This document shows positions 27,727 to 51,645 of a stretch of DNA of 64,000 nucleotides, piece after piece (within the stretch, counting starts at the first letter, position 1; the number at the start of each line of letters is the position of its first letter). Source of the DNA: Blastocladiella emersonii ATCC 22665 (Eukaryota; Fungi; Blastocladiomycota). The notes beneath the pieces were generated by a model, which ran no database searches, was not told where the DNA came from, and saw only the letters and a list, made by a program, of their open reading frames with translations. Location: the NCBI GenBank assembly GCA_025594325.1, contig JANHCV010000012.1:744001-808000 (forward strand), in the 5' to 3' direction. The position numbers and the translations under genes were made by a program.

Positions 27727-28852
27727 TCAATCAGAAAGATTCTCGTGACTCGGGAGAGAAGACGAACTCTCGCGGTGCGTAGTCTGCGAGTTGTGCGGCG
27801 CCGCCGTGACCGTGACGGCATCCGTGAATTGATGTGTATGCACGAGGCCGAGCACCTCCGTGAGAAACGCTTCTGAAAGACTCCATTCCGGCACCGAATC
27901 GCCCGGGTGTTCATGGCGCTGGTACCGCGTCTTATCGCGCATCGTGCGCCGAATCAGCCACTACCAGTACAACGCACAGACCCTGCATCAGGGCTCCGCA
28001 CCGCTTGCACTAGGATGAGAGAGCAGAAGAAAATCGACGTACCTTGAACCGCTGCTGGTTGATGAACCGGAAGAACGGGTACCGATCGTAAATCCAGTGG
28101 AAAAGGTCCTCGAGGGTAAGCCGCCGCGTCGGCGCCTCCAGCAGCGCAAGCGAAATGAGCTGCGGTGCCGTGAGGAGCGGCCGGTGGTACACGGTCCCAG
28201 TGGCCGGATCCACCGAAGCGGTCTCCAGCGGTATATTGCCGCGACCACCGGCAGATTTTTTGCCAGAGACGGACCGAGTCGAGGCGGCGGATTTGAGTCG
28301 CGAAGCGGAACGCAGCTTGCGCGGTTGAGCTGACCGCACCGCTCCATGAATCAACGCAGCTGGTTGCCGAGGTGATATCGGAGTAGCGGTGGAAGGCTGC
28401 GTGGGGCCGGCGAAGCGTCGCGAAGAAGTGTTTGGCGCATTCGACGACCTCGGGTCGACTTGCCAAACCGATTGCAGCGCCAGTGCAGCCGCACCATCGG
28501 CATCAGTTCTCTCGGGCGAGGAGGAAGAGCTGACGCGCGCTCGAGTTCCCACGCTGTCGTCGCGCGAGTCGCGCGTCGGGTGCGTCGCGTTCTGTGCGTC
28601 CGCCGGGTCGGCAAGCACCCACGGACGCGTGTCGAGCGGCACCGACCCGAGCGTTGAACGCGACAAGCCAAAATCAAGATTCGCAGTCAATTCGTGGCTC
28701 GCGAGCGATAGGCCGACCGGCGGCGAGTCGCATTCGGGCAGCCACGGCAACGGCGATGGCGAGCGCGGTGGGAATGCGAGCTCGCAGCGTGGCTCTCGCG
28801 CGATTGTCGGGCCGGGCGACGCGGACATGAATGCAGCAAGTGTTTGATTCAT
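27727..28852 (-). CDS. Divergent forkhead protein FH1, 2 exons
   Basis: RPLLTAPQLISLALLEAPTRRLTLEDLFHWIYDRYPFFR = forkhead H1-H2. Phase-0 intron 28042-27961. Exon 2 WLIRRTMRDKTRYQRH..VPEWSL = H3 and wing Trp. Confidence 0.8.
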
Positions 28853-28943
28853 TTGTTCATGGGATTCAGCATTCTGAGCGTCGAAGCGGGAGAGCGCGTG
28901 CCGCTGGCGATCGCAAGGCTGCCCTGCAAACATCGCGCGCCAC

Positions 28944-28967
28944 GCGCGTGAGTGGCGCAACGCGACT
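28944..28967 (-). promoter_or_regulatory. 24-nt upstream element shared exactly with 31779-31802
   Basis: GCGCGTGAGTGGCGCAACGCGACT (+ strand) occurs identically 92-115 nt upstream of FH1 and 116-139 nt upstream of the hydrolase gene. Confidence 0.5.
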
Positions 28968-29143
28968 TGCAGCTCAGGCACCGTCGCGGCACTCGAGCCA
29001 GTTCGGTTGCGTTCCCGACCGCTCTCAAGGTAGCCCTGGCTTCGGAGCAACACGGCCCTTTCCAGTAGTCCACGACGGGCAGCTCAGCCAGAAATCACAA
29101 TCTCATGTATTTATCCTAGGCATCGCGGCCAAGCAGGCTAGTG

Positions 29144-30094
29144 CTACGTGCTGTATTCGCTTGACCCTGATCGCACCGCGAATGAACCCAAGGGCGCAAG
29201 AATTCTCTGCATCGTGGCTCCCGAGACGCTCCACTCCACTGGACCGTTCCTGGTCGCCTGGTGCCGCTCAAACACGTCCCGTTTGTACAGCATGCACCTG
29301 ACCGTATTCTGGGACCGCGCACGCGCTATTCGTTAACGATTTGCTTTGCGTTGCCTTGACAGCGACAACGACAGCGACAGTCAACATACCTTTAAGCGAC
29401 GCTGGTCCATGAAGCGAAAGAACGCGTAGTGTTTCACGAGGTACGCCACAATATCGCGATGTGACAGGCGCCGGTTCGGCGCCGCGGCGAAGGCCAGGCA
29501 ACTGAGCACCGATAAGGATTGCTTCGGTCGGTGGTACACGACCCCGGTTGCTGGGTCCGTTGACGTGTATATTTTGGTCGACTTCTTTCGGGAGCCAAGG
29601 ACATCCACAGGATTGCGTAGATCTTGTCGCAAGAAAGCTGGGTTCAACGCCAAGCTGGCCGAAGTGTTGGCTGCAGCCACGAAACTGGGCGAGGATAGCA
29701 GCGCAGGCAAAAATAGCGAGCCGCTGGAAGGCATGGTGGGTGGAATTTGGAGTACTGTGTTGCCAGGCAGATGCGCGTCTGTCATTGAAGCCGACTCGGG
29801 CGACGGCATGGTCCAGAACGGCGCAGCACTGCCCTCCGTGAGGAAACGCGGCTCCAGCGCGGCGGGTGACGGCTGCGACCCGCTGTCAAAAGCAGCAACA
29901 GGAAGCAAAAGCGGCGAGTTCGGAGCAACTTGAGGCGCCAATCCATCTCCGATGAAAGCAAGTCCAGCGGGCGGAGAGTCACAGGTCGGGAGCGACGGCG
30001 ACGGTGACCTCGGCGGTGGCGCAGCTGAGTGGAGGCAGCGGTCAAACTGAAGAGGTTGGCCGTTTGGTGCTGACATGGTTGCATCAAGTTTCAT
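29144..30094 (-). CDS. Divergent forkhead protein FH2, 2 exons
   Basis: RPKQSLSVLSCLAFAAAPNRRLSHRDIVAYLVKHYAFFR. Phase-0 intron 29389-29309. Exon 2 NTVRCMLYKRDVFERH..VEWSV, stop at 29144. Confidence 0.8.
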
Positions 30095-30721
30095 TCATGT
30101 GGCTTCATCGGCTGCTGCATCTGAGTGGTTACGCAGGAGAGACAATCGCGGCATCGCCCTGGTCGGTTGCATAGGTCCGCCACAGCCAAGCCACCCGCGT
30201 CACGTCCAGCGCACGTGCGTAAGAATACCTACCGACCATCACCCCGCCAAGCCAGCGGGTGCAGAGAAGCGCGAGAACCATGACAAAAACGCGTCGAAAC
30301 GGCGTGTGTGCGAGACCGCGGTCCGTGATGGTGAACGAGAGTTGCCTCAGCGCGGTGGCAGTGAACCCTCGGCTTGGTCGCGCCTTGGGCTTAAGTCGAG
30401 TCCTCAAAGCTACGATTGATAAACGCAACTGAGTCGCGAAGCGCCAAAATGGACCGGGACAGGCATCACACGCGCTGGACCATCAGGAAGGCCATCGCGG
30501 GGCTTGTTTGGTCGCGATCGCAACAAGGCGCGAGGTGATTCGATGACCAGGATACCGAGAATATATTGTTCCTTGAGCTGGAAAGCAAAGCGTAGTGGCG
30601 CCAGTAAACGAGGCACGCCAACTGACTCCGTCGCGTGAGCGCCAACCAGCAACGTCTAGACTGGATGCGCGACTGGGAATGGACCGAAGTCCTAGCCGGC
30701 GACAAGCGGTCGAATGGCGCC

Positions 30722-31663
30722 CTAGTCAACCGGCTCGATCTCCAACGGCAGCGCGAGCCAGGACTCGACGAGCGCGACGACGTCTACCACGAGCTTGCCG
30801 TAGCTCGCCGGATCCAGCGTTGCGTCAAAGATGTGCGTGTGGGCCTCGATTGGGTTGCTGCACGTGGTCGGGATCGGGCGGAACAGCGCCGTGATGTGCG
30901 GCGGGAGGTCGCGCGGGATGTACACAAATGAGGACGGGGCCGCGGCCGTCGTCGCGTCGGTGCTGGCATCTGGCGGGCGCCGCCGAATCTTGGGGTACAG
31001 GCACTGCACCCGGACGCCGGTGTCGAGCAGGTACTGCAGCCGCTCGACGCGCCGGGCCAGCGACTCGCCGAAGAGTGGCGCGAGGAACGTGATGTAGTTG
31101 GACAAAAAGTGCGCGAACCCGGCGCCCAGGACGGCGGGGGCGGCGAGCGCCACGGCCTTGCGCCACAGCGACACGGGCGCCATCATGACCTGCACCACGC
31201 TCACCAGCGGGCGGTGCGCGAGATTGAGCAGCTCCGGCTGGAGATGGAAGTAGGGCGTGTCAAAGGCAAGCAGGCCAAGGACTCGGATGGCGCTCGGGTC
31301 GACGCCAGCGGCCGTGGTCTCGTGCAGCGGATGCGTCGCGTCGGTCAAGATCCGCACCGCATCGGCCGCAACGAGACCGCCCATGGAGTGGGCGACGAGA
31401 ATCAGGTCGAGGCGCGGTGGCGCAGCGCCGTTGGACCCGTCCTCGTCGGCAGCCACCGGCGGCACCAAGTCCAGAATGTACACGACGGCACGACGCGCGG
31501 CCTCGGCGAGCGTGTGCTTGCAGTCAAAGGCGGGGAGCACCTTGCACTCGAAGCCGTGCAGGTCGAGCCGCGCCTCGAGGTGCTCGGGGAAGCGCGCAAA
31601 CGACTCCGCGCTCCCGAGGAAGCCGTGGACGAAGAGCAGGACGCCTTTGCATTTGCTTTGCAT
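30722..31663 (-). CDS. Alpha/beta-hydrolase (PGAP1/DUF676-like putative lipase)
   Basis: LLFVHGFLGS oxyanion segment, nucleophile elbow VAHSMGG, LAFDTPYF, C-terminal His in IEAHTHIF. Confidence 0.8.
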   Translation of the reverse strand: MQSKCKGVLLFVHGFLGSAESFARFPEHLEARLDLHGFECKVLPAFDCKHTLAEAARRAVVYILDLVPPVAADEDGSNGAAPPRLDLILVAHSMGGLVAADAVRILTDATHPLHETTAAGVDPSAIRVLGLLAFDTPYFHLQPELLNLAHRPLVSVVQVMMAPVSLWRKAVALAAPAVLGAGFAHFLSNYITFLAPLFGESLARRVERLQYLLDTGVRVQCLYPKIRRRPPDASTDATTAAAPSSFVYIPRDLPPHITALFRPIPTTCSNPIEAHTHIFDATLDPASYGKLVVDVVALVESWLALPLEIEPVD

Positions 31664-31778
31664 CAGATATACATGTGAGGTTGGGCAAGGTGAGAGCGGG
31701 GGAGGCGCTTCGAGAGGCGCACCTTGGCCGCAGGCTGGCGATCGGCGAAGGGCTCAAGTCAGGTGACGCTCGAGCCGG

Positions 31779-31802
31779 GCGCGTGAGTGGCGCAACGCGA
31801 CT
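31779..31802 (-). promoter_or_regulatory. 24-nt upstream element shared exactly with 28944-28967
   Basis: Exact 24-nt identity. A further GCTGGCGATCG lies in both regions between the element and the ATG. Confidence 0.5.
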
Positions 31803-35253: not shown

Positions 35254-36382
35254 TTATGCGGGTGGGCGAGGGAGGATGGGAACGGGCGGCCTGCTAGGTG
35301 GGAGAGGAGTTGCGACGCGCTGATGCATGGGCGGCCGCGGCGTTGAAGAGCCAGTGTTCGGTAGCGGCTCGGACGCTGGTGCAGCAGGCACGACCAAAGG
35401 CTCTACGGTTGGACGAGGGCGGATGGGTACGAGGGATCGTGGAGGTGGTGGCTCGGTCCGCAGCGAGGACGAATCGACGCGCGGCTGAACGGTTTGGAGC
35501 GCAGATGACAAGGCATGTGACTGCACCGTTGGTCGAGGGGAGATGACAGCAGGCGGCTGTGTCGATGGCCGCGGGGCAATAGCGACAGGCGACCGCACCG
35601 ATGGGCCGCTAGGCAAAGCGCCGGTCCGCTTCGCGGCTGGCCGAGGGTGGATGGCAACGGGTTTACGTTGACGCAACGACTCAAGGGGACGTTTGCGAGC
35701 AGGGCGTCCACCACGCCGCTTACGGTTCATTTCGTCTGGAAGCGGTGCGCTGGGGCTAGTCTCGCAGCGGGTGAGGTTAGAAGTTGTTAAATAGCCGAAG
35801 GTGAAACGTGGAATACGTGAAAGCAGGGACGGGAGCGGGCAACGGCGAAACGAACGGCACGCGGTAGCCGTAGTAAGGCGACGGGTGAATGTAAGCGGGG
35901 ACGTGGCCGTAAGGGCTGAAAGCGCCGAGCGGATTTGTAGACGAGTGCACTCCGAAGCCAGGAGGGACCGCAGTGGCAGCCTCAGAGCGAGCTTGCTCAT
36001 CCGCGGAAGCAAGCTGCGCGAGCGGCGCGTCATGACAAAGCGGAGCAGTAGGTGATACCGGCGCCCTTTCCAAGTCTACCACATCTACGTGTAAAACGTT
36101 CTCGCATTCTGCCACGAGTGTCCGGTGAGGTGACGTTCCGCCATCCTGCAGGACATAAGGTTGCAGGGAGCGTGTTTGTGGAGGCTGATCGCTGCCCGAG
36201 TTGATGGGGCGAGAAAAAAAGTACTGAGAGCCATGGGCGGACCAAAATGACTGAGTATCACCGTTTGGCGAAAGACCGGCGGGCGGAGAGTCGCAGTTTG
36301 GCAGCGAAGGCGACCGTGAGCGCGGCGGGGTCGCGTCGGGGCTGCGCACGAAGGCAGCTGATTGCTCGTGTAGCTCAAACAT
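35254..36382 (-). CDS. Two-exon Pro-rich protein with the FH-family N-terminal module and five IxPRP repeats; no forkhead domain
   Basis: TPPRSRSPSLPNCDSPPAGLS near the N-terminus. Phase-2 intron 35816-35756 with CTAAC branch point. Exon 2 has IHPRP, IAPRP, ISPRP, IRPRP, ILPRP. Confidence 0.6.
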
Positions 36383-36687
36383 AATTGCAGCAAGTTTCAG
36401 CTTCTCGTCTTCATTGGGCGCAACGCTTGGGTTCACGATTGCGAAAGCGAGAACGATGCAATTCAGAACCAGTTGGTCGGTCCGACTGCCAAGCCACACG
36501 TGTGGCGGCGGACACGTGCGGCTGAGCTTCGCGTCCCCCATCGCCCTGTGCAGTGACGAGTAAAGCTATTGATATTATTGCACACAGACGGGAAGACAGT
36601 CGAAAAGAACACAACGAGAAAGCGAGCGAGACACCGCAACGGGACCCTTGCGTGTCGCGTTAAGACGCTGCAACCAACGACTAATCA

Positions 36688-37540
36688 TCAGTCGATCCGA
36701 GAAAGCTCGATCGGGTCTGGGGCGTCAGGAGCGATCCGCTCAAGCTCGGAAGAGACCCAACTCATGTCGGCCGTGGGCCCCGCGGTCGCAGCGAGAGTCC
36801 AGATCAGCTCTGCAAACGACTGGCGAGCTGAGCGGGCCTTGAGAGCGCCGCTCGGGAAAACCCGCAAAAAGTCGAGTGTGACGCTGCCCGCGCTGAACTC
36901 TTCGCACAACGCGATCACTGCACCCTTAGAGTCGCCGTGAAGCAATGCGAGCGTCAGAAGTTGGGCCGACGCGAGTCGATCGCAGGTACACGGCGACGCG
37001 GAAGCAGATACATGATTGTTGGACTTGGCTGTTGCAAGCTTGTACAAGCGCGACCAAAAGTTCTCGAAGGGTAGATGGGCGACGTGTGCGGGTCCGATTT
37101 GGATCTGACCCAAAGTTCCCCAAGAAGTGAGCGCCAGATCGGATGAACCGCGAACGGACAGTTCGCGCACTGCGCGAAGCCTAAATCGCCAACCGAACCG
37201 ACTGAGATGCTCGAGAGTGTCGTTGAATCAGGTGTAAAAAGCGACCGGATCAATACATGAAGATAGAGCTTCGCAATGCTCGGCTTCGGTGCGATAGACG
37301 TCAGCCCGCTGCGCCGATCCGAGAAGATGGACGAAACCAGCTGCACTAAGTCGCACAGCGTCGACCAAACGAACTCGTCGGCACCCTCGTACGAGCCAAG
37401 GAATTCAAGTAGCTCGTCAGGGACTGCTGAGCTCGACGTGTCAAGCAAAACGCTTCGAGGGCGCGCATCGTATCCGCGGCCAGAAGCCCTTGCGAATTCA
37501 CAATAGGCCAATGCAAAGTCGACCAAGCGCAGCGTTGCCG
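36688..37540 (-). pseudogene. P1-type second-exon (CxxC/CxC domain) remnant, frameshifted, overlapping the end of P2
   Basis: VPDELLEFLGSYEGADEFVWSTLCDLVQL aligns to P1 IPSELLAFLGSYSGNDESVWAMCVDLVQL. CANCPF aligns to CPTCPL and PCTCDRLASAQL to PCGCDRLKSAQL. There is a frame change at about 37050-37130. Confidence 0.75.
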
Positions 37541-39768
37541 CCATTCCGCGTCCCCACGTCAACAGCTCGCTCGGTCCAAAGCGAGTCCTTGACGCCTATA
37601 AGCGCGCCTGTGGGTAAAACACGCCAAAAGCTGAGTAGGAGAGGAGCGTCGAGCTCGATAGCGTCACTAAGAACATCCAGCATCGCGGCCAGGTCGGTGC
37701 GGATCAAGAGCTGGACAAGGTCGCGTAACGGGTACGCCAAAGTGTCACACGCTGACAGGCACCGAAGGACGCGACGCCCGTTGGAGCTCGCAGGCCGAAA
37801 GGTCAGGTTCGCAACGTCGTCAACTGAAGCGAGGATGCTAGCGAGTTTCTCGGCAACAACAAGCGGAATACGCCGAAGGCACTGCGGATCGAGGACCAAA
37901 AGCTCGCGAACCGTGTCGAGCCACGCACGCTGATCCGCGATTGAGCATTCGCCGCAGGAAATGGCACGAGATGGAGCAAGCGGGAAAAGGTGCCGACCCG
38001 CGCGGTTGGAGACCTGCGCCGAGACCATGGCGCCAAGAAACGAACGCGCTGTGTCGCTTTCCCTGATCAGCGCGATAGCGGCGCTGCGAGTTAAACGACT
38101 TTGAAAGACAGCGACAACAACCCATGCGAGTTCGGCGCAAATCGGACTCGACAAGCGAAGGGCGGTCGCGTTTGCAAGAAGAAACACGTCCCACAAGTGC
38201 GGCGAGGGCTCGCTTGAAAACACGGCAGCCATAAGCTTGCTCGAGTCGGGGTTGAGGCGAGTGAGGCGACCGTCGTCATCAGGATGCAGGACCGTCTCAC
38301 GCAAAACCAAAGCGAGCTCGTGACAAAGATCTGGCGCCATTTCAAAACGTTGCTGTCGCACAAATGCAAGTACATCCTGCGGCATAAATTGATCTGGGAC
38401 GAGGTCAAGCGATGCACGGAACGCTACACATAGCATAGGAGGGATCAATTGATGGTTGTTGCGCGCGCCCAACGAGGAAAAAAAAAATAACGAACCCCGC
38501 AGCACAGCACTCTGGAATGAACCATCAAGAAGTTGAGCGGCCGCGGTAGCGAGAGGACCCGCGGGCCCGCCGCCCTGTTGACCCAGCGCAAAGGTAAGAA
38601 CGAAGTCCCAGTCCAAGTCGTTGAGCAAGTCTTCCTTGGCCAAGATGGTCAGGACCTCGGGATCAATCGCGAACGGACCGCCAACGAGCCGGTGGCTGAA
38701 AAGTTCGCGCTCGCTACTGGCAATCGAGGTGTCTGAGTTCTGCAAAAGCCCCGCCAACTTATAGAGGATGACCGGCGTCCGGGCCAAGTGGGTGACAAGC
38801 TGTACATTTTCGAAGAGTGTCGGAGCGGCCGTCCAAGATTCGCGGAGAAGCCACTGGAGCACCATCGCAACGCCCTGAGCGTTCTCGGGACTCATATGCA
38901 TATGTGCGTGTGTTTCGAGAGAATCCAACAGGCTGGCGGAGACTACTTGGCGTTCGAAGCAGCGGGCGAGCCAACGAGACTCGAGACCAAACGCGGGCAC
39001 ATCAAACAGAGCTAAAAGACTCGGCAAGTCCCAAAGGAAGATGGCGAGAATGCCCAGGAAGCCAAGCAAGCATACCGGATTGTCAGCCCAAGTTATGACG
39101 TGGTCATAGATCGTATTGTTAAACTCGTAGGGCGTCAGCACAAACCAAGTGATAGCTGGCATCCGGATGGAGAAGAGCCCGGGAACTCGCTGCTGTGTGT
39201 GTCGAAGCAGGCAGGTAAGTCTAGACGGTTCGAGATGCATAACCGCAAGGATCATGGGCTGGCAGAGAGTTTCCGCAGGAGAGCCCTTGCATTGATGCGC
39301 ACGGGCAGCAATGATTGAGGCCTTGAGCGCCGCAGTCGAGGATGCTGGACTAGTATCAAAGGAGCGCAAGGCCAGGGACGCAAGCGGGAGAATGTGATCT
39401 AGAAGCACCGAAAAGAGCGACGCAAGGGCAGGATGGGGACGGTCTGGCTTGGACGACGAAGTTTGGCGTCGCTCGTGACAGTACTCGAGGAGCGCCCCGC
39501 TGTCCGAGATGAAAACGATATCGCCAGCCTCGCCAGTCCCGTACTCGTCCAGCCAGTCCGCAGGGGGGCCGGAGGCCAGTAAGTGACGAATCCATGCGCC
39601 CTGAACGGGGGTGCATTGTGAGAGAACATGAAGTTCGCGCGTTGCTGCACAGACGGCCGATCGGGGTCGGGCGAGCTGGAGCGCAAAGGTCATCAGTTCG
39701 ACTGGGAGCATGGTGAGCGTTGAGCGCTCATGCGGTTGCAGCAAGTTTCCTTCATTAGCTTCGTGCAT
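37498..39768 (-). CDS. F-box-like/CxxC-domain paralog P2
   Basis: TLTMLPVELMTFALQLA N-terminus. In-frame 72-nt phase-1 intron 38495-38424 at the position homologous to P1 and P3. SCGECSIADQRAW..CLSACD. Confidence 0.7.
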   Translation of the reverse strand: MHEANEGNLLQPHERSTLTMLPVELMTFALQLARPRSAVCAATRELHVLSQCTPVQGAWIRHLLASGPPADWLDEYGTGEAGDIVFISDSGALLEYCHERRQTSSSKPDRPHPALASLFSVLLDHILPLASLALRSFDTSPASSTAALKASIIAARAHQCKGSPAETLCQPMILAVMHLEPSRLTCLLRHTQQRVPGLFSIRMPAITWFVLTPYEFNNTIYDHVITWADNPVCLLGFLGILAIFLWDLPSLLALFDVPAFGLESRWLARCFERQVVSASLLDSLETHAHMHMSPENAQGVAMVLQWLLRESWTAAPTLFENVQLVTHLARTPVILYKLAGLLQNSDTSIASSERELFSHRLVGGPFAIDPEVLTILAKEDLLNDLDWDFVLTFALGQQGGGPAGPLATAAAQLLDGSFQSAVLRGSLFFFSSLGARNNHQLIPPMLCVAFRASLDLVPDQFMPQDVLAFVRQQRFEMAPDLCHELALVLRETVLHPDDDGRLTRLNPDSSKLMAAVFSSEPSPHLWDVFLLANATALRLSSPICAELAWVVVAVFQSRLTRSAAIALIRESDTARSFLGAMVSAQVSNRAGRHLFPLAPSRAISCGECSIADQRAWLDTVRELLVLDPQCLRRIPLVVAEKLASILASVDDVANLTFRPASSNGRRVLRCLSACDTLAYPLRDLVQLLIRTDLAAMLDVLSDAIELDAPLLLSFWRVLPTGALIGVKDSLWTERAVDVGTRNGGNAALGRLCIGLL

Positions 39769-40217
39769 GGTTGTTGCGGGCGAGAGCAAGAAGTCGAGGC
39801 GTTGCGGTCACAGCCAAAAGTTGTTCGCTCGGGCGACATCACGCGAAGTGGCGCATCGCGGCTTCTTCTCCCACCCCGCATGGGCACTCAAAATGTGATT
39901 CATTCCATGAACGATACTCTTGCGTTCTCACACGCAGCCCGCGCCTACTCCTCGACCGCGTGCTTCTGCGCCCCGTCGCCGCCGCAGCCCGCGGCCACGT
40001 CGCGCAGCTGCTTGGCACCGCGCCCGAGCCGGGTCTCGCCCTTGTCCGTCTCCGGCGGCTGCCGCATCTTCTCCTTAGCCTCGGGGCCGAACTGCATCCC
40101 GCCGCGATGCATCGGGGCCGAGCCATGCGGAACTGCGCCACGGCCAGCGTCGACCATCGCCGTGCCGTGCGGATCGGTCGCGTAGTGCGGGTCGGTCGCG
40201 TAGTGCGGGTGGCGCAC

Positions 40218-40917: not shown

Positions 40918-41044
40918 GGTGGGTGTGGTGTTCGTTCCGTAGGGTGCCGCGGCGACGAAGGAGGAGAGAGTGGAGCGTAGTGGTGAAGGGCAGCCGTGAG
41001 CCGCGGCGCACGACCTGGTCGCCCAACGGCCGCGCAACGGGGAC

Positions 41045-42453: not shown

Positions 42454-44866
42454 TCAGCACCTGTGCATGATTGCAACCATGGCATCGGCGTACTCGCGCG
42501 AGGCGACCGTCTTGGGCGCGGCGCGGCGGATTTCGTCGACGATGGCCCGATTCGGGGACGGCTTGCGAGCCTCGTACACGACCCTCTGCGCAATCCAGAA
42601 GGCAGCCTTGACGCCGTCAAGCATACCATGGGGCACGGCGCGCCAGAACGAGATTGGGATCCCATCCGCTTTGGTCTGGTCTTCGAGCAGATCCAGGACC
42701 GCGGCAAAGTTGGTGCGTAACAGAGACTGAAGCAGCTTGCGAATCGGATGAGGCACATGTCGGCAGGGGCATCCAGCATCGAGTGGCTTGTTGTACATAG
42801 TCTTGCCGTCCAGCGAGTCAAGTGGTTTGAGAATTTCGATGAAGCGAGCGACCGCGGGGACAGGAAGCCGGTCGAGGCCTGCTGGATCGAGCGCGAGAAG
42901 CATATCCAAGGCAGCAAACCAGCTGGCCTGCCCGCGAAGATTGCAGGTTGAACAAGTTGCGATGTGCGGCCAACCGAGCGGAACGGCATGAAGCTCAGGC
43001 GGACTGCTAAGCGAGGCACAGATCATGACTCCGAGGAACCGTTGCACCGTGCCTGAGCGACGCATCAGCTCGCCGGCACGATCGCGAAGCGCTTCGTTGT
43101 GTGCCACAGCGACGGGCAGCCACGCGAGAGCCGGACACATGGTGATGGGGGCGCGCAGGAGCGTGGCGTTGGCCAAGAGGAAAAGATCCCACATGTCCGC
43201 GTCGAGTTTGCTTGAAAACACGGTCAAAAAACGGTTGCACAGCATCGGCGTGGAACAAAGGGGAGAATGGGTGCAGACTGCGTTGAGCGGACTGGATGAC
43301 GTGTCGCATAGCGATTCGGCAAAAGCGTGTACGAGCTCGTTCATGATTTCGCCGTGATGCTGCCGAACAAATTGCAAAACGTGCTGCGCCAAAGAATGAA
43401 CGGTGGACCCAATTGAACGCACGAAAACTACAAAGTAGCCGAAGATACAAAGGTTTGAGTACATGACCCTACACTGCTACGCTAGCATTGTACCTTGCTT
43501 AGCAACCTTGGCGAAACGATCCTTTGTAAGCGAAGCGACCACAAACGTGGCGACCGGACCAACTGGGCCCCCACCACTCGCGCGCAATGCCGACCGAATG
43601 TACGATTTCTGTCCAGGAAGAATCGCCAAGCAGGCCGAGCTTGTCGAGGACCACAAGGGACGCCGGGGGTAGAGGCGGCATATAAAATGTAATGCGCATG
43701 CGGGCCGCGATGGCCTCGCGATGAACCGGAATCTCGCTTTCGAGAATGCGACGGGAATCCACAAGAACAATGCGCTGAAGGATGAGGGGGGTCTCGAACA
43801 AGAGCGTGACGAGGTGATCGTCGTCAAAGACAAGCGAATGGTCGGCTGGCAAGAAATCACGAATCAGGCGCTCGACGGTTGAAGCAACTGCCTCGGTTCG
43901 GTTGGCGGAGATATCATCGTATCGCCGGATGCCGTGAAACAGGACAATTGTGACCACTTCGTCGCACATAATCGATTTGAGCCACTGCTCATCGAGATCG
44001 AAGGAGGACGACGCGCGAAGCGCATCGAGAGTTGGCATATTCCACGTAAACACACAAAGGAGGGAAACGACGTTGATAAAGGGAATATCTTGCTCCAGGT
44101 ATTCGCTCTCGAATTCGTCGAGAAGCGCCTCAAGGTCGTTGAGCTGATCCATGTAAGCAAGTGAGCTCCACTGCGTGATGGTGAATCGGACGTGAAGCAG
44201 GTCGGAGAACCGGCCTTTTACGTCGGAGAGAATACGAATGAAGTTAATCGGATCAAGGGATCGCACGGCGTGGAGAAGTAGCTGCAAGATGGCAAGGAGC
44301 GGGCGAGACCAGGCGCGGCGGTCCCAAGTTGACTTGCTAAGTTGGCCAACGAGCGCTGCCTCAAGCTGGGCGAAGTCACCGCCAAATGATCGCATGGTGA
44401 TCATCGCAGCATCCGCCAAGCAACTGACGAGGACGGTGTAGAGCGTTGTAACGTGCTTGTAAGAAAGGTGATCGCGGGTGACCACTCGCAAATACTTGTG
44501 CTCCGCCGCATTCGAATCCATGTCAATGAAAGTAGCGGTGTTTGGGGTAGACACAAGGCTGGGGATCACGGTAACTTCGGCCGTCAGCTCAGCAGTGTGC
44601 TCGAGAAGCGCGGTGAGGTCGCACGCATTGCCGCTGTCCAGGTACAGCGAGTCTTTGTCCTCGGCCGGAACGCGGTGAACGAGTATATGCTCGATCCAAA
44701 AGCGTTTGATGTGCGCCGTCGCCGCAACGTAGGAAAGCTCGCGCGACGCGGCAGCAAGGACGGAGCGCGGGTAAGCGAAGCGGAGCACGCCCCCAAGTAG
44801 TTCGACAGGAAGCGCCGCAAGCGTGCCGAAAGGTTGCATAGAGTCGCCTAGTTCATTGGTTTTCAT
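42454..44866 (-). CDS. F-box-like/CxxC-domain paralog P3, one frameshift in a (GC)n run near 43580
   Basis: TLAALPVELLGGVLRFA N-terminus. Phase-1 intron 43493-43428. MWDLFLLANAT aligns to P2 LWDVFLLANAT. CSTCNL..GCPCRH. ASGGGPVGPVAT (shifted frame) aligns to P2 QGGGPAGPLAT. Confidence 0.7.
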
Positions 44867-45260
44867 CGTGGATGCGGTGGATTGCCAGGGGGAGCGAGAG
44901 CGCGGCGTCGCGGCCGGTGGGAATTTAGGCGGGCGGCGGTGATCACGGCGGTGTGGCGTAACACGTTCCGTCCTCACGTTCGGCCCCTCTCCCCGCTCGC
45001 ACGACCACCCCCGGTTATCTGGCGCGCCAACTAACCTAGATCACTGCAGAAACAAAGTGTACATGGCTAGTTCAGTTGGTTAATTGGTGTTTCGATGAGC
45101 GGTGAGTGGAGCGAGAGTTCCAAAGCGACCATGAACGCGTTGCGGCTCGCGACGCGCCCAACTTCCATTGCGTTTCGCATGAGATCCATACTCAGGAACA
45201 AACCAGACGTATTTAACGACGCGACGGCTCTCGAGTCCCATACCGCTCCGCCCAACAAAC

Positions 45261-46246
45261 TCAGAGCGACGCCGGCCGCGCTCCCACTGGTCCCAGGATG
45301 AGCGCGAGGTCGGCATCGGCCACGGCCACGGTCCACTTGGACCTACGACCGCGCCCAACCTGCTGTATCGAGCGCGTTACGAAGAAGGAACGCTTGTACA
45401 GCGCATCCCGCACCGACGCCTACACGGACTCGCCCAAAGTCGCAACACGAGCGCGAGCGTGTCAGTCAATGCCCCCGGCCTCATCCATCACGGCCACGAT
45501 CCGCGTACCTTTCATATCAGCTGATCCTCGACGAATCGAAAGAACGGGAACCGCGCCTCGATCGCGTCGCAAATCGCCACGGCCGTGAGCGTGCGGTCCG
45601 GCGCATCCCTGAGCGCCAAGCACACGAGGTGCGTCATGGCCAGTGGTGGCCGCTCGTACACGGCGCCGGTCGCGCGGTCGATCGCTGTCACGTCTTTGAT
45701 GACGGCCGTGCCATGGGCGTGCCGGAACGATTTCAAACAGTTTAGCCCCTTGGCCTTTAACCAAAGAAGCGTGTCGGGCGACCGCGGGGGTCGAGCGGTG
45801 CGGGTCAGACGGCCGCGCGGCGCGGTTGATGATGCGGCAGCAGCGGGCGACGAAAGACTTGGCAAAGTCCGAGGAGGGATGAGATCAACGTTGACAAGCA
45901 AGGGAGCAAAGCTATCTCCAAGGACGAGGTCGCGAGCGTTGGCGCGAGGAGTTGCCTGACGATCGCCTACGCGGTCGCGAGTGTCAGCGCGCAACGCGAC
46001 TTGCCGCCCGTTAGCGCGCGAGACAGGAGGTTGAAGTCGCGGCGGAGCTTCCACGGGCTGCCAGTATGTAGTAGGCGCGTGCGAGAGTCCAGCAGGCGGC
46101 GAGTTGCACTCGGGGAGCGGTTGAGACATCGGCGGGGATGGCGACCTTGGCGGCGCGGTCACGACAAGCCTTTGGTTGACGCTCAGCGGTTGGCCGTTTG
46201 GCACAGAAGCGGTTGCACCAAGTCCAAAGACGTCCATTCGATTCAT
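45261..46246 (-). pseudogene. Forkhead FH3 with a nonsense codon at the conserved Trp before helix 3
   Basis: EDQLI-TGA-K followed by intron 45508-45420; paralogs read EDQRR-TGG-R. Exon 2 ASVRDALYKRSFFV..SKWTV is still open. Confidence 0.75.
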
Positions 46247-46447
46247 TAGGAGTGCTCGTGGCGTTGAGTCCAGAGAGCGAGAGCGAAGATGGGCACGCGT
46301 TGCGCCGCGCGACCGACCTTACAACGCGTCTGACTTCCACCCGGACGTTGGATCAGATCAGTGGTCGAATCAGTTCGACTCAAGGTCTAGTCGACCGTTC
46401 TCTATAAAGAGAAATTAGAATCTTATGTCATTTTCCACCGGGTATGC

Positions 46448-47587
46448 TCAGACAGAAGCGACCTGCTCCTGCTCGTCCACAACCCCCAGGAGCTTTCTAA
46501 GGTCGTCTTCTGCCACGGTCCATTTGACATCGCGCGTGCACGGGCCTGGGCGGTGCGATACGAAGCATCTGCGCTTGGCCAGCGCATCCCCCAACGATCG
46601 CTACCCCGCACGACGCCAAGCATTAGTCCATCGTCACGCCTCACCGTCGCAGAAGTCCGTCCTGTAACGCACCCTCCAACTGCATTGATTATTAACGCAC
46701 CGGAAGAACGGGAACCGCGACTTGATCCAGTCGCACATCTCCGCGGTCGTGAGCGTGCGGTCCGGCACTTGCGCCAGCGCCAGGCACGCAAGCTGCGGCA
46801 TGGTCAGCGCCGGCCGCTCATACGTGATGCCAGTCGCGGGGTCGACCGCCGTCACGTTCTTGACCACGCTTGACACGTAAGCACGCCGGCGGAAGGTGGC
46901 GCGGTGCGGCTTCGGCGGGACCGCGTGCAGCGGCGGCGACTGAGCGATTGGTTTGGGCTGCGGCACGATCGGAGCACCAGTTGGTGCGACCATCGCCGCC
47001 GTGGGATTGGGAGACGTAACGGCGCTGGACGCCGCCGCGGCGCGCGAGGTCGCACTTGAGCTTGGGAGCGTGGCTGCGACCCGCATCCGCTTGTGCAGGC
47101 GCGAAGGCTGAGAAAGCAGTGGAGAAGCAGGGCTGGCGCGCGGCTCAAGCTCGCGCAGTCGAGTGTCGCGGGAAGCAGGCGATCTGGCATACGAGCCGAG
47201 CGGCGGTACCGCGGCGACCTGCACCAAGTTTGGGGCGAGAGAGTTCGAAGATGCGGCAGTTGATCCGTGCCATGGAGCGAGATCGAGCGCGGAACCATTG
47301 TCACTGAGTGCAGCAATGAGCTCTCCAGCAGACACGCAGCCTTGCAATCGTTTGCTCGAGTGGATCAGCGACGGGAAGAGCTGCAAATGCGGAAGGGCTT
47401 CCACAGGCTCCCAGTGCTGGGACGGAAGAGTCGAGAGTCCAGCGGGCGGCGAGTCGCACTCGGGAAGAAACGGGGACGGGGACCGCGGCGGCGTGACCGC
47501 GCTGTTCATGTCGCGGTCGAAGCTCAATGGTTGGCCGTTGGGTGCCAGTGAGGTTGCGGCGAGTCCGTAAGAGTCCATTTGATTCAT
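46448..47587 (-). CDS. Divergent forkhead protein FH4, 2 exons, intact
   Basis: RPALTMPQLACLALAQVPDRTLTTAEMCDWIKSRFPFFR. Phase-0 intron 46672-46601. Exon 2 RSLGDALAKRRCFV..VKWTV. Confidence 0.85.
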
Positions 47588-47828
47588 TGATGTTCTGAGC
47601 TGCGAGTGAAGGGAGAGGACGACTGCTGGCCAACAGCCCCGAGAGCCGACTGCGCCACACCTGAGCTGAACCAGTCAGTCCGCTTCGCGCCACGCCCTGC
47701 GCCACGCCGCCGGCCAACTCACCGCCAGGACGACCGAGGAGAGAATATAGCAGTACGACAACGTAAATCAAAGGTAGACGCCATGTAGATCTGCCAAACA
47801 ATGCGACGGCGAGAACCGCGATGGGCGA

Positions 47829-48915
47829 TCACAATCCAAGCGCCGCGACCAGCTCGCGCACGGGTGCCAGGATCCGCGCGAGGTCGGGTTCGGCCACGGT
47901 CCACTTGACATCGCGCGTGTCCCTGCTCCGGTGCGGGATCGACACCAGCGACTTGTGCTTGCTGAGCGCATACCCCATCGATCGCTACCCGACACACACG
48001 CGCGTCAGTCAACGGCAACCCGCCCCGCCCCCACCACGATCCCAATCCGCTGCGTACCCGCCACCTCCTCTGATCCTCGAGCACCCGATAGAACGGGATC
48101 CGCGCCTCGATCCAGCTGCAGATGGCCGCGAACGCGAGCGTGCGGCCCGGCGTATCCTTGAGCGCCAGGCACGCGAGCTGCGGCATGGTCAGTGGCGGCC
48201 GCTCGTACGTGTTGCCCGTAGCGGGGTCGACGGCGGCCAAGTGCTTGGCGCTAAATAAGCCATGGGCGCCATGGGCTTGGCGCCGAACGGGTTTAGCTCG
48301 CGACTGCAGGTCCTGGGGCCGCGCGGATGGGGCGGGGCCGAGGGAACCAGCGGAGGTTGGCGTGGCCGCGGAGCGGGGTGGCGAAACCGCAAGTCCGGAC
48401 GCCGCGGTGCCCGAGCAGCTCCGACTCGAGTCCAATCTTGGGATCGCGGTCGAAACCCGCATCCGTTTGCGCGGGCGCGGCGACGGGGGCGGTGACGCAG
48501 GACGGGTCGGCGAAGGCGCAGCGCGCAGGGCGGTAACGCAAGGTTCCTCGCGGGAGAAACCACGAGCGTTATCGTAAGCAAGCGCAGGAGAGTCGGCTAC
48601 GAAAACAGCAGCGAACTTCTCCGCCGCAAGCCGGCTGCAGGTGTTGTGGAGCGACATGACCTGCTGTCGCAGCGCGTCGCTGCCCGAGTGCACCCGCAGG
48701 GCGGGAGTTTGTAGTGGGTGCGGCGGAGCTCCTGCTGGTTTCGAGGGCACGAAAGCTAGTTGCGAGAGACCTGCGGGCGGCGAGAAGCAGTCCGGGAGCA
48801 AGGGCGGCGACGGCGACCTGGGCGGCACGAGCGCGGGGTTGCCGCGGCCGTGGTCAACGCTCAGTGGTTGGCCGTTGGGTGCGGATGAAGTTGCAGCAAG
48901 TCCGTAATAGTTCAT
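47829..48915 (-). CDS. Divergent forkhead protein FH5, 2 exons, intact
   Basis: MNYYGLAATSSAPNGQPL start. Forkhead H1-H2 RPPLTMPQLACLAL..WIEARIPFYR. Intron 48057-47985. Exon 2 RSMGYALSKHKSLV..VKWTV. Confidence 0.85.
47930..48114 (+). repeat. 185-nt near-identical tract shared with 50612-50796 (FH5/FH7)
   Basis: 183/185 identity by eye, including the whole 73-nt intron. Confidence 0.9.
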
Positions 48916-49231
48916 GCGATGCGTTGGTTCTTTGAGTGCAGAGAGGAATCGGGCGCGACCATCGAAGCGAAGCAGCATCGTGCTGCGCCTCGGCAGCGAC
49001 TCGCACAAACAGACCACCATCAAGACGACGATCAGGGAGCAAAGGCAGAGCACCTCCTGTATCACACCGGCACACCAAGCCGGTCTCCGGCTAGCCGGGC
49101 GAGAGCAGTCGCCGGGTCACAGTACGACGCCGGACGCCCCCAGCGACAGTTATCTTCCTCGTTCGCACTCAAGCCGAGGCGAAGAGCAATGTTGATCTAC
49201 AACAGTGTACGCCGGGAAGCGGGATGCCCGA

Positions 49232-50291
49232 TCACAATCCAAGCGCCGCGCCCAGCTCGCGCACGGGGCCTAGGACCACGTCGCGGTCCACGTCCGCCAC
49301 GGTCCACTTGGTCTTGCGCGAGTGCGGGAGCTGCAGCGATCGGGCGACGAAATACTTGCGCCCCCGTGCAAAGCGCTACGTAGCGCGTCCTAGATCACCG
49401 GCGTACGTACATACGTGCGTTAGTCGAAGGCACCACCGCCGCCGCTGGCGCCCCCGCACAAGACGCACCTTCCACCCGCTCGGCCTCTCAACGAACCGAT
49501 AGAACGGGAACCGCGCCTGGACCCAGGCACAGATCTCGGCGCACGTGAGCGCGCGGTCCGGCGCGTGCTCGAGCGCGAGGCACGCGAGTTGTGGTATGGT
49601 CAGCGCCGGCCGCGCGTGCGTGGCGCCGGTTGCGGGGTCGACTGCTGTCACGACCTTGACTAACGCGGCCGTGCACGCGCGCAGGCGCGGCATGGCGCGG
49701 TGCGGGGTCGCGGCGGCGGCGGTGGCGGCGGTGGTACCGGCTTCGAGTTTGAGCTACCCCGTCTCCGCTTGAGCGGTCGCGGAGACGGGGGTGGTGGTGA
49801 TGAAGCGGAGCTGGCGCGGGGCGGCGGATCGGGCTCGCGCAGCGGAGTGTTGCAAGAAGCAGATGTGGAAGACGGACGGCGACGCGACGTCGGAAGACGA
49901 AGCTGACGCGATATTTAGGGCGCGAAATCTCGTCAGCTGGGCCGTGCCAATCAAGCGGAGAATCGTCTGCAGCAAGGAGAAAGTCGGCCTCGAGCGCGAG
50001 CTCGCGGGGGTCGTCGCCGTGCTCGTCCTCTCGCTCACTCGAGCGGGAGTGCGAGTATTCTCGCGAGACAGGAAGCTGATGCCGCGGCGACGTTTCTACG
50101 GGCTGCCAGTGCGCCGAAGTCACGCGCGCGAGACCTGCAGGCGGCGAGTTGCACTCGGGAAGCGGCTGAGACAGCGGCGGGGAAGGCGACGGTGGCGGCG
50201 CCGTCACGACGAGACCGCAATAGACGTGCAGGAATTCGCCGTTTGGCACCGACCAAGTTGCATCAAGTCCGAAGAAGTTCATTTGATCCAT
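49232..50291 (-). pseudogene. Forkhead FH6 with several frameshifts
   Basis: N-terminal module, linker (SSASSPPPPSPRPLKRRR) and FH core (RPALTIPQLACLAL..WVQARFPFYR) lie in different frames. Intron 49468-49390. Exon 2 DALRSALH is followed by a frameshift in a G5 run before RKYFV..TKWTV. Confidence 0.7.
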
Positions 50292-50513
50292 TGGGGGACA
50301 GCATCGCTCGTGGCCGGTGAGTCGAGAGAAAGAGAGCGCGGAGCGCGCTGCGCCACGATCACTTGGCCACGGACTCGCCGTCCAGCTAGCTCACCGACGT
50401 CTCCGCCGCCCATCAATCGCTCGTTGCTCGTTGCATCAGTTCCGCGAGCAAGAAGACCATGTTGTCAATGAAGCGCCTCTCTGAAACCTACGCCGTACGC
50501 CACACCGCGTCGG

Positions 50514-51645
50514 CTACGAGCGTGACGCGGCGTGCTCGCCAACAGGTCCCAGGATCCGCGCGAGGTCGGGTTCCGGGACGGTCCACCGCGTCTCGTGCGT
50601 GTTCTTGCTCGGGTGCGGGATCGACACCAGCGACTTGTGCTTGCTGAGCGCATACCCCATCGATCGCTACCCGACACACACGCGCGTCAGTCAACGGCAA
50701 CCCGTCCCGCCCCCACCACGATCCCAATCCGCTGCGTACCCGCCACCTCCTCTGATCCTCGAGCACCCGATAGAACGGGAACCGCGCCTCGATCCACCCG
50801 CACATCGCCGCGTGCGTGAGTGTGCGGTCCGGCGCGGCCTTGAGCGCCAGGCACGCGAGCTGCGGCATCGTCAGTGGCGGCCGCTCGTACGTGTTGCCCG
50901 TAGCGGGGTCGACGGCGGTCAAGTGCTTGGCGCCAAATAAGCCGTGGACTTGGCGCCGAACGGGTTCGAGGTTCTCCCGCGAGTGCTGCAGGTCATCATT
51001 GAGCCGCGCGGATGGAGCGGGGCGCGACGCGGTTGGGCGCAATGGCGAAGCGGCGCTGGCGGATGGAGCCGTGACCGGTGAGCGAGACGGCACGCTGGAT
51101 GTCGCGGCGTCTGAGGTCGAGGTTGATATCGCGGTCGACACCCGCCTCCGCTTGCGCGGGCGCAGGCACAGGCGCGGAGGCGACGGTGATGGCGCGGGAC
51201 TCGTTGGCGATGAGGCAGAGGCATCGCACTGAGGCGCGGCACGGGAGGCCTCCCCGCGGGCGAGATTGCGAGCTTCATCGCAAGCAACCTCAGGCGGATC
51301 GTGCGCGAGATCAGTAACCGACTTCTCCGCCGGAGGCCGACATCCGCGGGTGTCGGCGCGCGGCGAAGGCGGCCGCCACTCAGGCCGCCACTGTGTGTTG
51401 CCGCTCGAGTAAACTTGCGAGTGCGGAAGCTGGAGCCGCGGCGGGGGTCCCAAAGGTTCCGGGTGCGCGGAAGGTGGGAGGTGTGAGAGACCCGCGGGTG
51501 GCGAGTCGCAGTCCGGGAGCAGCTGCGGCGAACAGTGCGGCGACGAAGGCGGCGCGATGTCGCCGTGGCCATGGCCGCGGTCGAAGCTCAGCGGTTGGCC
51601 GTTTGGCAATGACGAAGTTGCAGCAGGTCTAGTATAGTAGTTCAT
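50514..51645 (-). CDS. Divergent forkhead protein FH7, 2 exons, intact
   Basis: MNYYTRPAATSSLPNGQPL start, FH core, intron 50739-50667, exon 2 RSMGYALSKHKSLV..TRWTV. Confidence 0.85.
50612..50796 (+). repeat. 185-nt near-identical tract shared with 47930-48114
   Basis: Two mismatches in 185 nt. Confidence 0.9.

What the first reader, a model, noticed from the sequence alone, without database searches (positions are those of the whole stretch)
27727..51645. Seven-gene forkhead cluster with a hypervariable DNA-recognition helix
Seen: seven minus-strand genes (FH1 27727-28852, FH2 29144-30094, FH3-FH7 45261-51645) share H1-H2, the wing Trp and a phase-0 intron just before helix 3. The ORF track hides helix 3 because it lies in exon 2. 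After splicing, helix 3 reads WLIRRTMR, NTVRCMLY, ASVRDALY, RSLGDALA, RSMGYALS, DALRSALH and RSMGYALS. Established: forkhead proteins almost invariably have NSIRHNLS-like helices whose Asn and His contact the RYAAAYA site, and several Fox classes have an intron at this position. Here His is replaced in all seven copies and Asn in six, while the scaffold is kept. Inference: a lineage-specific family that diversifies DNA specificity (an arms-race-type repertoire, e.g. against mobile DNA or for self/non-self programmes), or one that has swapped DNA binding for protein binding. I know of no description of this family.
Basis: partly seen in the sequence, partly recalled or inferred. Interest (0 to 1): 0.85.

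Follow-up and report, generated by a model that had tools for sequence, protein, structure and literature searches.

The report
Fungal forkhead cluster with rewritten DNA-reading helix
A water mould-like fungus (Blastocladiella emersonii) carries a largely unannotated tandem cluster of at least 12 forkhead transcription-factor genes that keep the forkhead fold but have replaced, and keep changing, the residues that normally read DNA bases. This points to new DNA specificities, though no expression or binding data exist yet.

Summary
Seven minus-strand loci at the stated coordinates encode forkhead H1-H2, a phase-0 intron of 72-89 nt and a second exon with helix 3 and the wing.

Two corrections are needed. 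FH3 has TGG>TGA at the conserved Trp codon. FH6 is frame-disrupted. So five copies are intact and two look dead.

The window is Blastocladiella emersonii ATCC 22665, contig JANHCV010000012.1, 744001-808000. Only FH5 is annotated, as a 94-aa fragment that uses the same splice junction. That fragment passes Pfam Forkhead (37.6 bits against a cutoff of 27) and models as a winged helix (pLDDT 93).

Five more genes with seven forkhead modules lie 24-36 kb downstream, and two of them are double-forkhead proteins. None keeps Asn and His. All 13 modules form one clade. The nearest environmental relatives share the intron but have the canonical NAIRHNLS helix.

Helix-3 positions 1, 5 and 8 differ in 11 of 15 close-paralog comparisons, against 35% elsewhere (p=0.003). 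The rest of the domain has omega of about 0.37 and stays basic.

Best reading: a lineage-specific, birth-and-death forkhead subfamily with re-specified DNA recognition. The arms-race idea is unsupported. Expression is untested.

The parts
27727..28852 (-). FH1, intact. Exon 1 28043-28852, intron 27961-28042 (82 nt), exon 2 27727-27960. Helix 3 WLIRRTMR at 27937-27960.
   Evidence: Pfam PF00250 on exon 1, E=5.6e-6. Not annotated in GenBank.
29144..30094 (-). FH2, intact. Exon 1 29390-30094, intron 29309-29389 (81 nt), exon 2 29144-29308. Helix 3 NTVRCMLY. This is the only copy that keeps Asn.
   Evidence: Pfam E=0.015 on exon 1. Not annotated.
45261..46246 (-). FH3, probable pseudogene. TGA at 45512-45514 replaces the conserved Trp codon. 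Intron 45420-45508, exon 2 45261-45419. Helix 3 ASVRDALY.
   Evidence: Pfam E=1.3e-4.
46448..47587 (-). FH4, intact. Exon 1 46673-47587, intron 46601-46672 (72 nt), exon 2 46448-46600. Helix 3 RSLGDALA.
   Evidence: Pfam E=2.4e-5.
47829..48915 (-). FH5, intact. Exon 1 48058-48915, intron 47985-48057 (73 nt), exon 2 47829-47984. Helix 3 RSMGYALS. This is the only annotated copy, as the 94-aa model KAI9159397.1.
   Evidence: The spliced domain passes the PF00250 gathering score (37.6 bits). AF2 pLDDT 93. Foldseek hits are all forkhead.
49232..50291 (-). FH6, probable pseudogene. The N-terminal motif, the KRRR motif and the forkhead lie in three frames. Donor after 49469.
   Evidence: Pfam E=1.2e-7 on the H1-H2 ORF.
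50514..51645 (-). FH7, intact. Exon 1 50740-51645, intron 50667-50739 (73 nt), exon 2 50514-50666. Helix 3 RSMGYALS.
   Evidence: Pfam E=2.1e-5.
47930..48240 (-). Near-identical tract shared by FH5 and FH7 (FH7 50612-50922). It covers H1 to S2 and includes the intron. It is a gene-conversion footprint.
   Evidence: Sliding identity is 285/300 inside the tract and about 50-70% outside it. The intron differs by 1 nt.
35777..36541 (-). Eighth gene. It carries the family's N-terminal motif (PPRS[PR]SP..LP.C.SPPAGLS) but has no forkhead.
   Evidence: tblastn E=2.5e-8. No Pfam hit. An AT-hook-like RKRRGGRPARKRP lies in the overlapping ORF 35254-36033.

Best explanation
This is a Blastocladiella-specific subfamily of forkhead (winged-helix) nuclear proteins, tandemly amplified and evolving by birth and death.

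It descends from a canonical forkhead gene that already had a DPATG-x-x-[YH]-x-RP extension before helix 1 and a phase-0 intron just before helix 3.

At the base of the family the base-reading residues of helix 3 (N-x-x-R-H-x-x-S) were replaced. Positions 1, 5 and 8 have kept changing between paralogs. Meanwhile the hydrophobic core, the residues at conserved forkhead positions outside helix 3 (R-P before helix 1, F-P-F-[FY]-R, the Trp before helix 3, the wing Trp) and the positive charge remain under purifying selection.

The most likely mechanism is that these proteins still dock helix 3 in the major groove but read sites other than RYAAAYA, with different sites for different paralogs. Double-forkhead genes would read composite sites.

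The proteins share an N-terminal proline-directed Ser-Pro motif and a KR[MR]RV nuclear-localisation-like motif, which suggests common regulation and nuclear import. Some copies (FH3, FH6, probably Lc2) are already dead.

Shown: domain identity, splice structure, monophyly, the pattern of variation, and constraint on the scaffold. Inferred: DNA binding, new specificities, regulation and expression.
For: - Fold and family: the spliced FH5 domain scores 37.6 bits on PF00250 across both exons. AF2 gives pLDDT 93.1 and pTM 0.80 with the order H1-S1-H2-H3-S2-wing-S3. The top 50 PDB matches are all forkhead DNA-binding domains, TM 0.65-0.79.
- Origin: the environmental relatives L004, L006 and L008 have the same DPATG extension and the same intron position but NAIRHNLS.
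- Single origin: the 13 B. emersonii modules form one split with 100/99 support.
- Variation pattern: helix-3 positions 3 and 7 stay I/V/L/M and L/M/A. Position 5 is the most variable column of the whole domain. Positions 1, 5 and 8 differ 11/15 against 175/500 elsewhere, p=0.003.
- Constraint: for the rest of the domain, omega is 0.12 (La pair), 0.38 (Lb), 0.64 (Lc), 0.56 (FH4/FH5) and 0.37 pooled. FH5 and FH7 differ by six or more indels, all in frame.
- Charge: net charge is +2 to +11, against a canonical mean of +5.4.
- Introns: all keep donor, branch and acceptor signals.
- Contact residues: N and H are the residues that make direct base hydrogen bonds in FOX domains (PMC8501956).
Against: - There is no expression or splicing evidence beyond one ab initio GenBank model. 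Two word-index protein searches found no transcript-derived products.
- Six of the seven window genes were not called by the genome's annotation pipeline.
- GC3 is 0.59-0.76 against 0.88-0.95 in neighbouring housekeeping genes.
- Omega is 0.5-0.8 within the FH4/5/7 group, and two or three copies are broken.
- Exon 2 alone gives no Pfam hit.
- The confident structure model depended on an alignment that contained canonical forkheads. The single-sequence model failed, with pLDDT 52.
- Gly at helix-3 position 4 in FH4, FH5 and FH7 removes the Arg of the canonical N-[SA]-I-R-H motif.
Confidence: 0.55

Rival explanations
1. The domains keep the winged-helix fold but no longer read bases. They would act as non-sequence-specific DNA or chromatin binders (like linker histone), or as protein- or RNA-binding modules. 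The variable helix-3 face would then simply be unconstrained.
For: - Asn and His are lost in almost all copies.
- Arg4 is replaced by Gly, Ala, Gln or Lys in 7 of 13 modules.
- Contact positions evolve at about the neutral rate rather than clearly above it.
- Exon 2 is unrecognisable to Pfam on its own.
- A family-specific C-terminal helix (D-L-x-x-I-L-x-P-V) replaces wing 2.
Against: - The basic charge is retained, and the conserved forkhead positions outside helix 3 (R-P, F-P-F-[FY]-R, Trp) are kept.
- Helix-3 faces remain rich in Arg, Lys, Tyr, Gln, Ser and Thr, which can contact bases.
- An unconstrained surface would not explain the retention of 12 or more paralogs, some with omega 0.12.
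Confidence: 0.25
2. The window cluster is mostly evolutionary debris: redundant tandem duplicates of a forkhead gene drifting toward pseudogenes. Helix-3 divergence would then be decay rather than new function.
For: - FH3 has a nonsense codon and FH6 has frameshifts.
- Lc2 lacks a usable acceptor.
- Omega is 0.5-0.8 in the FH4/5/7 group.
- There is almost no codon bias.
- The genes are not called by gene predictors.
- No homologous products exist in the protein databases.
Against: - Substitutions are not uniform. Core and scaffold positions are conserved while positions 1, 5 and 8 change.
- Omega is 0.12-0.38 for the La and Lb pairs at dS 0.4-1.3.
- Five open reading frames of 289-352 codons are kept despite many in-frame indels.
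- Splice signals are intact in all copies.
- The N-terminal motif is conserved across all 12 genes and one non-forkhead gene.
Confidence: 0.15
3. One reading: an adaptive, arms-race-type repertoire, for example against mobile DNA or for self/non-self recognition. Helix-3 contact residues would be under recurrent positive selection.
For: - Contact positions change fastest.
- The pooled contact-codon dN (0.70) exceeds the domain-wide dS (0.55).
- The genes show tandem birth-and-death dynamics with gene conversion.
- They are clustered with other orphan paralog families.
Against: - The estimate rests on only 12 codons and is not significant as a test of omega > 1.
- No link to transposons or to any recognition system was seen.
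- FH5 and FH7 carry identical helices.
- There are no population data.
Confidence: 0.05

Closest known systems
Canonical Fox/forkhead transcription factors (Pfam PF00250; e.g. FOXA2/FOXA3, FOXK, FOXN1; fungal Fkh1/2, Hcm1)
   Same: Same fold and order of secondary structure, and the same H1-H2 sequence signature. The Trp before helix 3 and the Trp in strand 3 are kept. An intron lies immediately before helix 3. The domain is basic.
   Different: The N-[SA]-I-R-H motif is gone, yet its Asn and His make the direct base contacts (PMC8501956). Helix 3 is the most variable part of the domain instead of the most conserved. Wing 2 is replaced by a conserved amphipathic helix. There is a family-specific N-terminal Ser-Pro/Cys motif.
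Environmental forkhead genes in RPN7-FKH-SPB4 synteny (P0029, P0031, P0033; loci L004, L006, L008)
   Same: They are the nearest sequence relatives. They share the DPATG-x-x-[YH]-x-RP extension and the same intron position after W-K.
   Different: They are single-copy, have the canonical NAIRHNLS helix and a basic wing 2. In the tree they fall with canonical forkheads.
Forkheads with alternative specificity (yeast Fhl1, FOXN family; FHL motif GACGC)
   Same: They are a precedent for forkhead domains reading something other than RYAAAYA (PMC8501956, PMC12795473).
   Different: As far as I recall, those proteins keep the N-x-x-R-H contact residues and change specificity through other parts of the domain. 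Here the contact residues themselves are replaced. I did not verify this comparison residue by residue.
Multi-forkhead array proteins of animals (e.g. Schistocerca piceifrons XP_047101480.1, 1758 aa; S. americana XP_046983359.1, 12 full domains)
   Same: They have several forkhead domains in one polypeptide and many helix-3 variants lacking Asn and/or His. Of 132 domains from multi-domain hits, 74 lack both. The double-forkhead genes A and B in L001 are a small-scale parallel.
   Different: They are unrelated lineages, and some carry C-terminal C2H2 zinc fingers. They lack the DPATG extension and the N-terminal motif, and they are not a cluster of single-domain genes.
Linker histone H1/H5 globular domain
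   Same: It is a winged helix that binds DNA without base-specific helix-3 contacts, so it is a model for the non-specific rival.
   Different: There is no sequence relationship. Pfam assigns only PF00250.

Membership tests
Forkhead domain (PF00250) | Sequence match to the family HMM above the curated gathering score | tested here: met
   The spliced FH5 domain (P0009) scores 37.6 bits against a cutoff of 27, E=2.4e-9, over profile positions 9-81 of 88. Exon-1 halves of all seven copies hit positions 1-48 at 16-32 bits. The other spliced copies could not be submitted as references.
Forkhead domain (PF00250) | Winged-helix fold in the order H1-S1-H2-H3-S2-W1-S3 | tested here: met
   The AF2 model has pLDDT 93.1, and Foldseek's top 50 matches are all forkhead DNA-binding domains. 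Caveat: the alignment included canonical forkheads, and the single-sequence run was uninformative.
Forkhead domain (PF00250) | Recognition-helix motif N-[SA]-I-R-H, with Asn and His contacting bases | tested here: not met
   His is absent in all 14 modules. Asn is present only in FH2. Arg4 is present in 6 of 13 modules.
Forkhead domain (PF00250) | Binding to RYAAAYA-type sites | not testable with these tools
   This needs PBM, SELEX or EMSA.
Forkhead domain (PF00250) | Homologous intron just before helix 3, shared with the nearest canonical relatives | tested here: met
   The intron is phase 0 and follows W-K/R in the six window copies with an uninterrupted exon 1 (FH6's exon 1 is frame-disrupted), in the L001 modules and in the environmental relatives. 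Many unspliced ORF calls of other forkheads stop at the same place.
Arms-race type tandem TF repertoires (KRAB zinc-finger-like logic) | Positive selection (omega > 1) at DNA-contact residues | tested here: inconclusive
   Pooled contact codons give dN 0.70 against dS 0.34 locally and 0.55 domain-wide, from 12 codons. The enrichment of changes has p=0.003, but that does not separate relaxation from positive selection.
Arms-race type tandem TF repertoires (KRAB zinc-finger-like logic) | Targets are mobile elements or other fast-evolving DNA | not tested
   No binding data exist, and no transposon link was examined.
Linker histone H1/H5 (PF00538) | Sequence match to the linker-histone HMM | tested here: not met
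   Pfam scans return only PF00250.

The most novel reading that the evidence does not exclude
The cluster is an adaptive repertoire in which forkhead recognition helices are under recurrent diversifying selection, so that each paralog (and each double-forkhead protein) reads a different, fast-evolving class of genomic targets. That would be a forkhead counterpart of KRAB zinc-finger evolution in an early-diverging fungus.
Probability: 0.1. Interest if true: 0.8.

Novelty: new variant of a known kind. Interest (0 to 1): 0.55.

Why it matters
The forkhead domain is a textbook case of a DNA-binding domain whose base-reading residues are almost frozen across opisthokonts. Known changes of specificity arise elsewhere in the domain.

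This family has 12 or more genes that keep the scaffold under selection but have swapped out Asn, His and often Arg of helix 3, and that differ from each other mainly at those positions. That makes it a natural experiment on how far the forkhead fold can be re-targeted.

It also shows that the current B. emersonii annotation misses or mis-splices nearly the whole family. Transcription-factor censuses of early-diverging fungi will therefore undercount such genes.

Tried and rejected
- The word-index homology search with full FH7 exon 1 returned nothing, because low-complexity words swamped the candidates. A second search restricted to the FH5 forkhead region also returned nothing.
- The search for related loci on genome contigs was useless, because that collection holds only prokaryotes.
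- Pfam on the exon-2 pieces alone gave no forkhead hit.
- The family-only alignment A3 put helix 3 in the wrong register, so it was not used. A4, bridged by canonical forkheads, was used instead.
- Single-sequence AF2 of P0009 gave pLDDT 52 and was uninformative.
- hmmalign to a canonical HMM trimmed the wings of several family members, so the column statistics beyond helix 3 rest on fewer rows.
- The idea of triple-forkhead genes, suggested by GenBank model P0010, was rejected. Each Lc module has its own N-terminal motif in the same ORF.
- TGA read as Trp in FH3 was considered and rejected, because there is no reason to assume a non-standard nuclear code.
- A regex search for an intron joining the two ORFs of the eighth gene found nothing.
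- The metagenome DNA scan was not used. The exhaustive protein search already covers ORF calls from those metagenomes and found only canonical-helix relatives.

Full report
**What is in the sequence**

The minus strand of 27.7-30.1 kb and 45.3-51.6 kb carries seven loci. Their long ORFs end in a forkhead H1-H2 segment. Pfam PF00250 matches profile positions 1-48 of 88 in every one, with E from 1e-7 to 0.015. A profile of the seven tails finds 38 solved forkhead chains, with FOXA2 7yze best at E=7.7e-10. tblastn with the three conserved pieces (N-terminal motif, H1-H2, exon 2) finds exactly seven forkhead loci in the window. It also finds one extra locus (36257-36400) that has only the N-terminal motif.

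**Gene models**

In the six copies whose exon 1 is an uninterrupted ORF, that ORF stops being homologous right after W-K/R (F-K in FH1, L-K in FH2), at a GT[AG][CT]G donor in phase 0. Between 72 and 89 nt later, after a CTRAY-like branch motif, a YAG acceptor opens a second exon. This exon encodes an amphipathic helix, a conserved Phe, a loop, a K/E-W-T/S-V/L strand and a D-L-x-x-I-L-x-P-V helix.

The public model KAI9159397.1 (P0009, 94 aa) uses the same FH5 junction. That spliced product passes the Pfam gathering score with one alignment running over both exons: 37.6 bits against 27, profile positions 9-81. The exon-2 pieces alone are too divergent to hit Pfam.

**Two copies are broken**

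- FH3 has TGA at 45512-45514 where all other copies have the Trp codon, two codons before the donor.
- FH6 has the N-terminal motif, the KRRR motif and the forkhead in three different frames.
The alternative in-frame acceptor removes most of helix 3.

The assembly is PacBio HiFi polished with Illumina reads (PMC9730499), so these lesions are probably real. The count is five intact genes plus two probable pseudogenes.

**Source and annotation**

Exact look-ups place the window in Blastocladiella emersonii ATCC 22665, GCA_025594325.1, contig JANHCV010000012.1, positions 744001-808000. Only FH5 is annotated, and only as a fragment. FH1, FH2, FH3, FH4, FH6 and FH7, the eighth gene and the orphan genes between them have no model.

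**The family is larger**

Locus L001 (contig 822348-844352, opposite strand) holds five more genes:

- Two have two forkhead domains in one reading frame, with the wing of the first domain and H1-H2 of the second in the same exon.
- Three are single-domain genes (Lc1, Lc2, Lc3). Lc2 lacks a usable acceptor.
- Their helices read PAVRTTLQ, DAVRATLH, KAIAVTLQ, KAIAKRLY, KQLQKGAV and KRVKNAVV.
- The GenBank models there (P0010, and P0003 named "Forkhead box protein K2") are chimeric and splice out helix 3.
- A singleton on contig 5 (P0049, L003) reads MSIRHKLY and lacks a wing.

**Relatives and origin**

An exhaustive HMM search of 1.84 billion representatives gave 695 hits. The divergent type occurs only in B. 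emersonii.

The nearest others are environmental genes in RPN7-FKH-SPB4 synteny. They share the DPATG-x-x-[YH]-x-RP extension and the same intron, but their exon 2 starts with NAIRHNLS.

In a maximum-likelihood tree, the 13 B. emersonii modules are one split with 100/99 support. FH3-FH7 form a supported group within it (96/91), and FH5+FH7, La, Lb and Lc form pairs. The helix was therefore rewritten once, at the base of the family, and the family then expanded by tandem duplication.

**Structure**

With alignment A4 (canonical forkheads bridging the exon pieces, in correct register), AlphaFold2 gives pLDDT 93.1 and pTM 0.80. The order is H1, S1, H2, a short helix, H3 (residues 39-52), S2, wing loop, S3 and a C-terminal helix. 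Foldseek's top 50 PDB matches are all forkhead domains, with TM 0.65-0.79 and rmsd 1.4-2.6 Å. The single-sequence control failed, so the model is not independent of the canonical sequences.

**Is helix 3 special?**

- In the family, helix-3 position 5 (canonical His) has the highest entropy of any column, 3.25 bits.
- Positions 1 and 8 are also among the most variable.
- Positions 3 and 7 remain hydrophobic.
- In five close paralog pairs, positions 1, 5 and 8 differ 11/15 times against 175/500 elsewhere (odds ratio 5.1, one-sided p=0.003). All six exposed positions give 16/30, p=0.036.
- Nei-Gojobori estimates for four intact pairs give omega 0.12, 0.38, 0.64 and 0.56 for the rest of the domain, and 0.37 pooled.
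- The 12 contact codons have dN 0.70 and dS 0.34. This is compatible with neutrality or positive selection but proves neither.

The scaffold is therefore constrained and the reading face is free or diversifying. That is not uniform decay.

FH5 and FH7 share an identical helix because a tract of about 300 bp, including the intron, is nearly identical while the rest of the genes is about 60% identical. This indicates gene conversion.

**Other evidence on function**

- Domain net charge is +2 to +11 (window copies +4 to +10), against +5.4 ± 2.0 for canonical domains.
- All 12 genes, and one non-forkhead gene, share an N-terminal motif of the type PPRSPSP-x-LP-x-C-x-SPP-[AV]-G-[LIF]-[SA]. The window copies FH4-FH7 also carry a KR[MR]RV basic motif upstream of the forkhead. 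These features suggest phospho-regulated nuclear proteins. This is inference.
- Against function: GC3 is only 0.59-0.76, while neighbouring housekeeping genes have 0.88-0.95.
- Omega in the FH4/5/7 group is 0.5-0.8.
- No transcript-derived or other protein products were found.

**Comparison with what is known**

These are members of the forkhead domain family by HMM score, fold and intron position. They fail one hallmark, the N-[SA]-I-R-H motif, whose Asn and His make the direct base contacts (PMC8501956).

Forkheads lacking these residues are not unique. Among the other hits, 9 of 54 single-domain and 74 of 132 multi-domain forkheads lack both. These include grasshopper proteins with up to 12 forkhead domains.

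I found no description of the Blastocladiella family.

**Verdict**

The finding is real, carefully observed, and larger than reported. It is a new variant of a known domain family. Functional claims remain inference, and the arms-race reading is unsupported.

Noticed in passing
window 37498-39789 and 42454-44977 (minus strand): A second orphan paralog family lies between the two forkhead blocks. One member is a 763-aa ORF. Its paralog is split into two ORFs (35% and 25% identity). There are no Pfam hits and no GenBank models. By eye, the N-termini look F-box-like (LPVEL...).
   Followed up: partly
window 35254-36541 (minus strand): An unannotated gene carries the forkhead family's N-terminal PPRS.SP..LP.C.SPPAGLS motif but no forkhead. 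The overlapping ORF in another frame contains an AT-hook-like RKRRGGRPARKRP and Pro-rich repeats. No intron joining the two ORFs was found.
   Followed up: partly
window 27.7-51.6 kb and L001 3.8-12.2 kb: Genes of the cluster have almost no third-position GC bias (GC3 0.59-0.76), whereas neighbouring housekeeping genes have 0.88-0.95. Regional GC dips to 0.58 at 36-46 kb. This probably explains why gene predictors missed them.
   Followed up: partly
window 47930-48240 vs 50612-50922: A gene-conversion tract between FH5 and FH7 covers H1 to S2 and the whole intron. It is about 95-100% identical, against about 60% in the rest of the genes.
   Followed up: yes
L001 5530-6970 and 10001-12005 (GenBank KAI9159405.1, KAI9159406.1): The deposited models are chimeric or mis-spliced. 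One joins the tail of a double-forkhead gene to the next gene. The other fuses two genes and skips helix 3, and is named "Forkhead box protein K2".
   Followed up: yes
L001 4821-5291 and 8280-8762: Two genes encode two forkhead domains in one polypeptide. The wing of domain a and H1-H2 of domain b lie in one exon, separated by a KRAR motif.
   Followed up: partly
P0001, P0002, P0005, P0157 (Schistocerca), P0006, P0008 (unnamed): The best-scoring database hits are animal or unnamed proteins with 4-12 forkhead domains in tandem. Some have C-terminal C2H2 zinc fingers, and many have non-canonical helix 3.
   Followed up: partly
L004, L006, L008 (metagenome contigs): Canonical-helix relatives of the family sit in conserved synteny between RPN7 (proteasome lid) and an SPB4-like DEAD-box helicase. 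L004's intron may have a non-GT donor.
   Followed up: partly
L003 10001-10728 (contig JANHCV010000005.1, KAI9179813.1): A singleton forkhead-like gene has the DPATG extension and helix 3 MSIRHKLY, but no recognisable wing after it.
   Followed up: no
window 51935-54043 (+) opposite 51875-54046 (-): A 702-aa antisense ORF runs opposite the acyl-CoA oxidase gene. It is an example of the long spurious ORFs this GC-rich genome produces.
   Followed up: no
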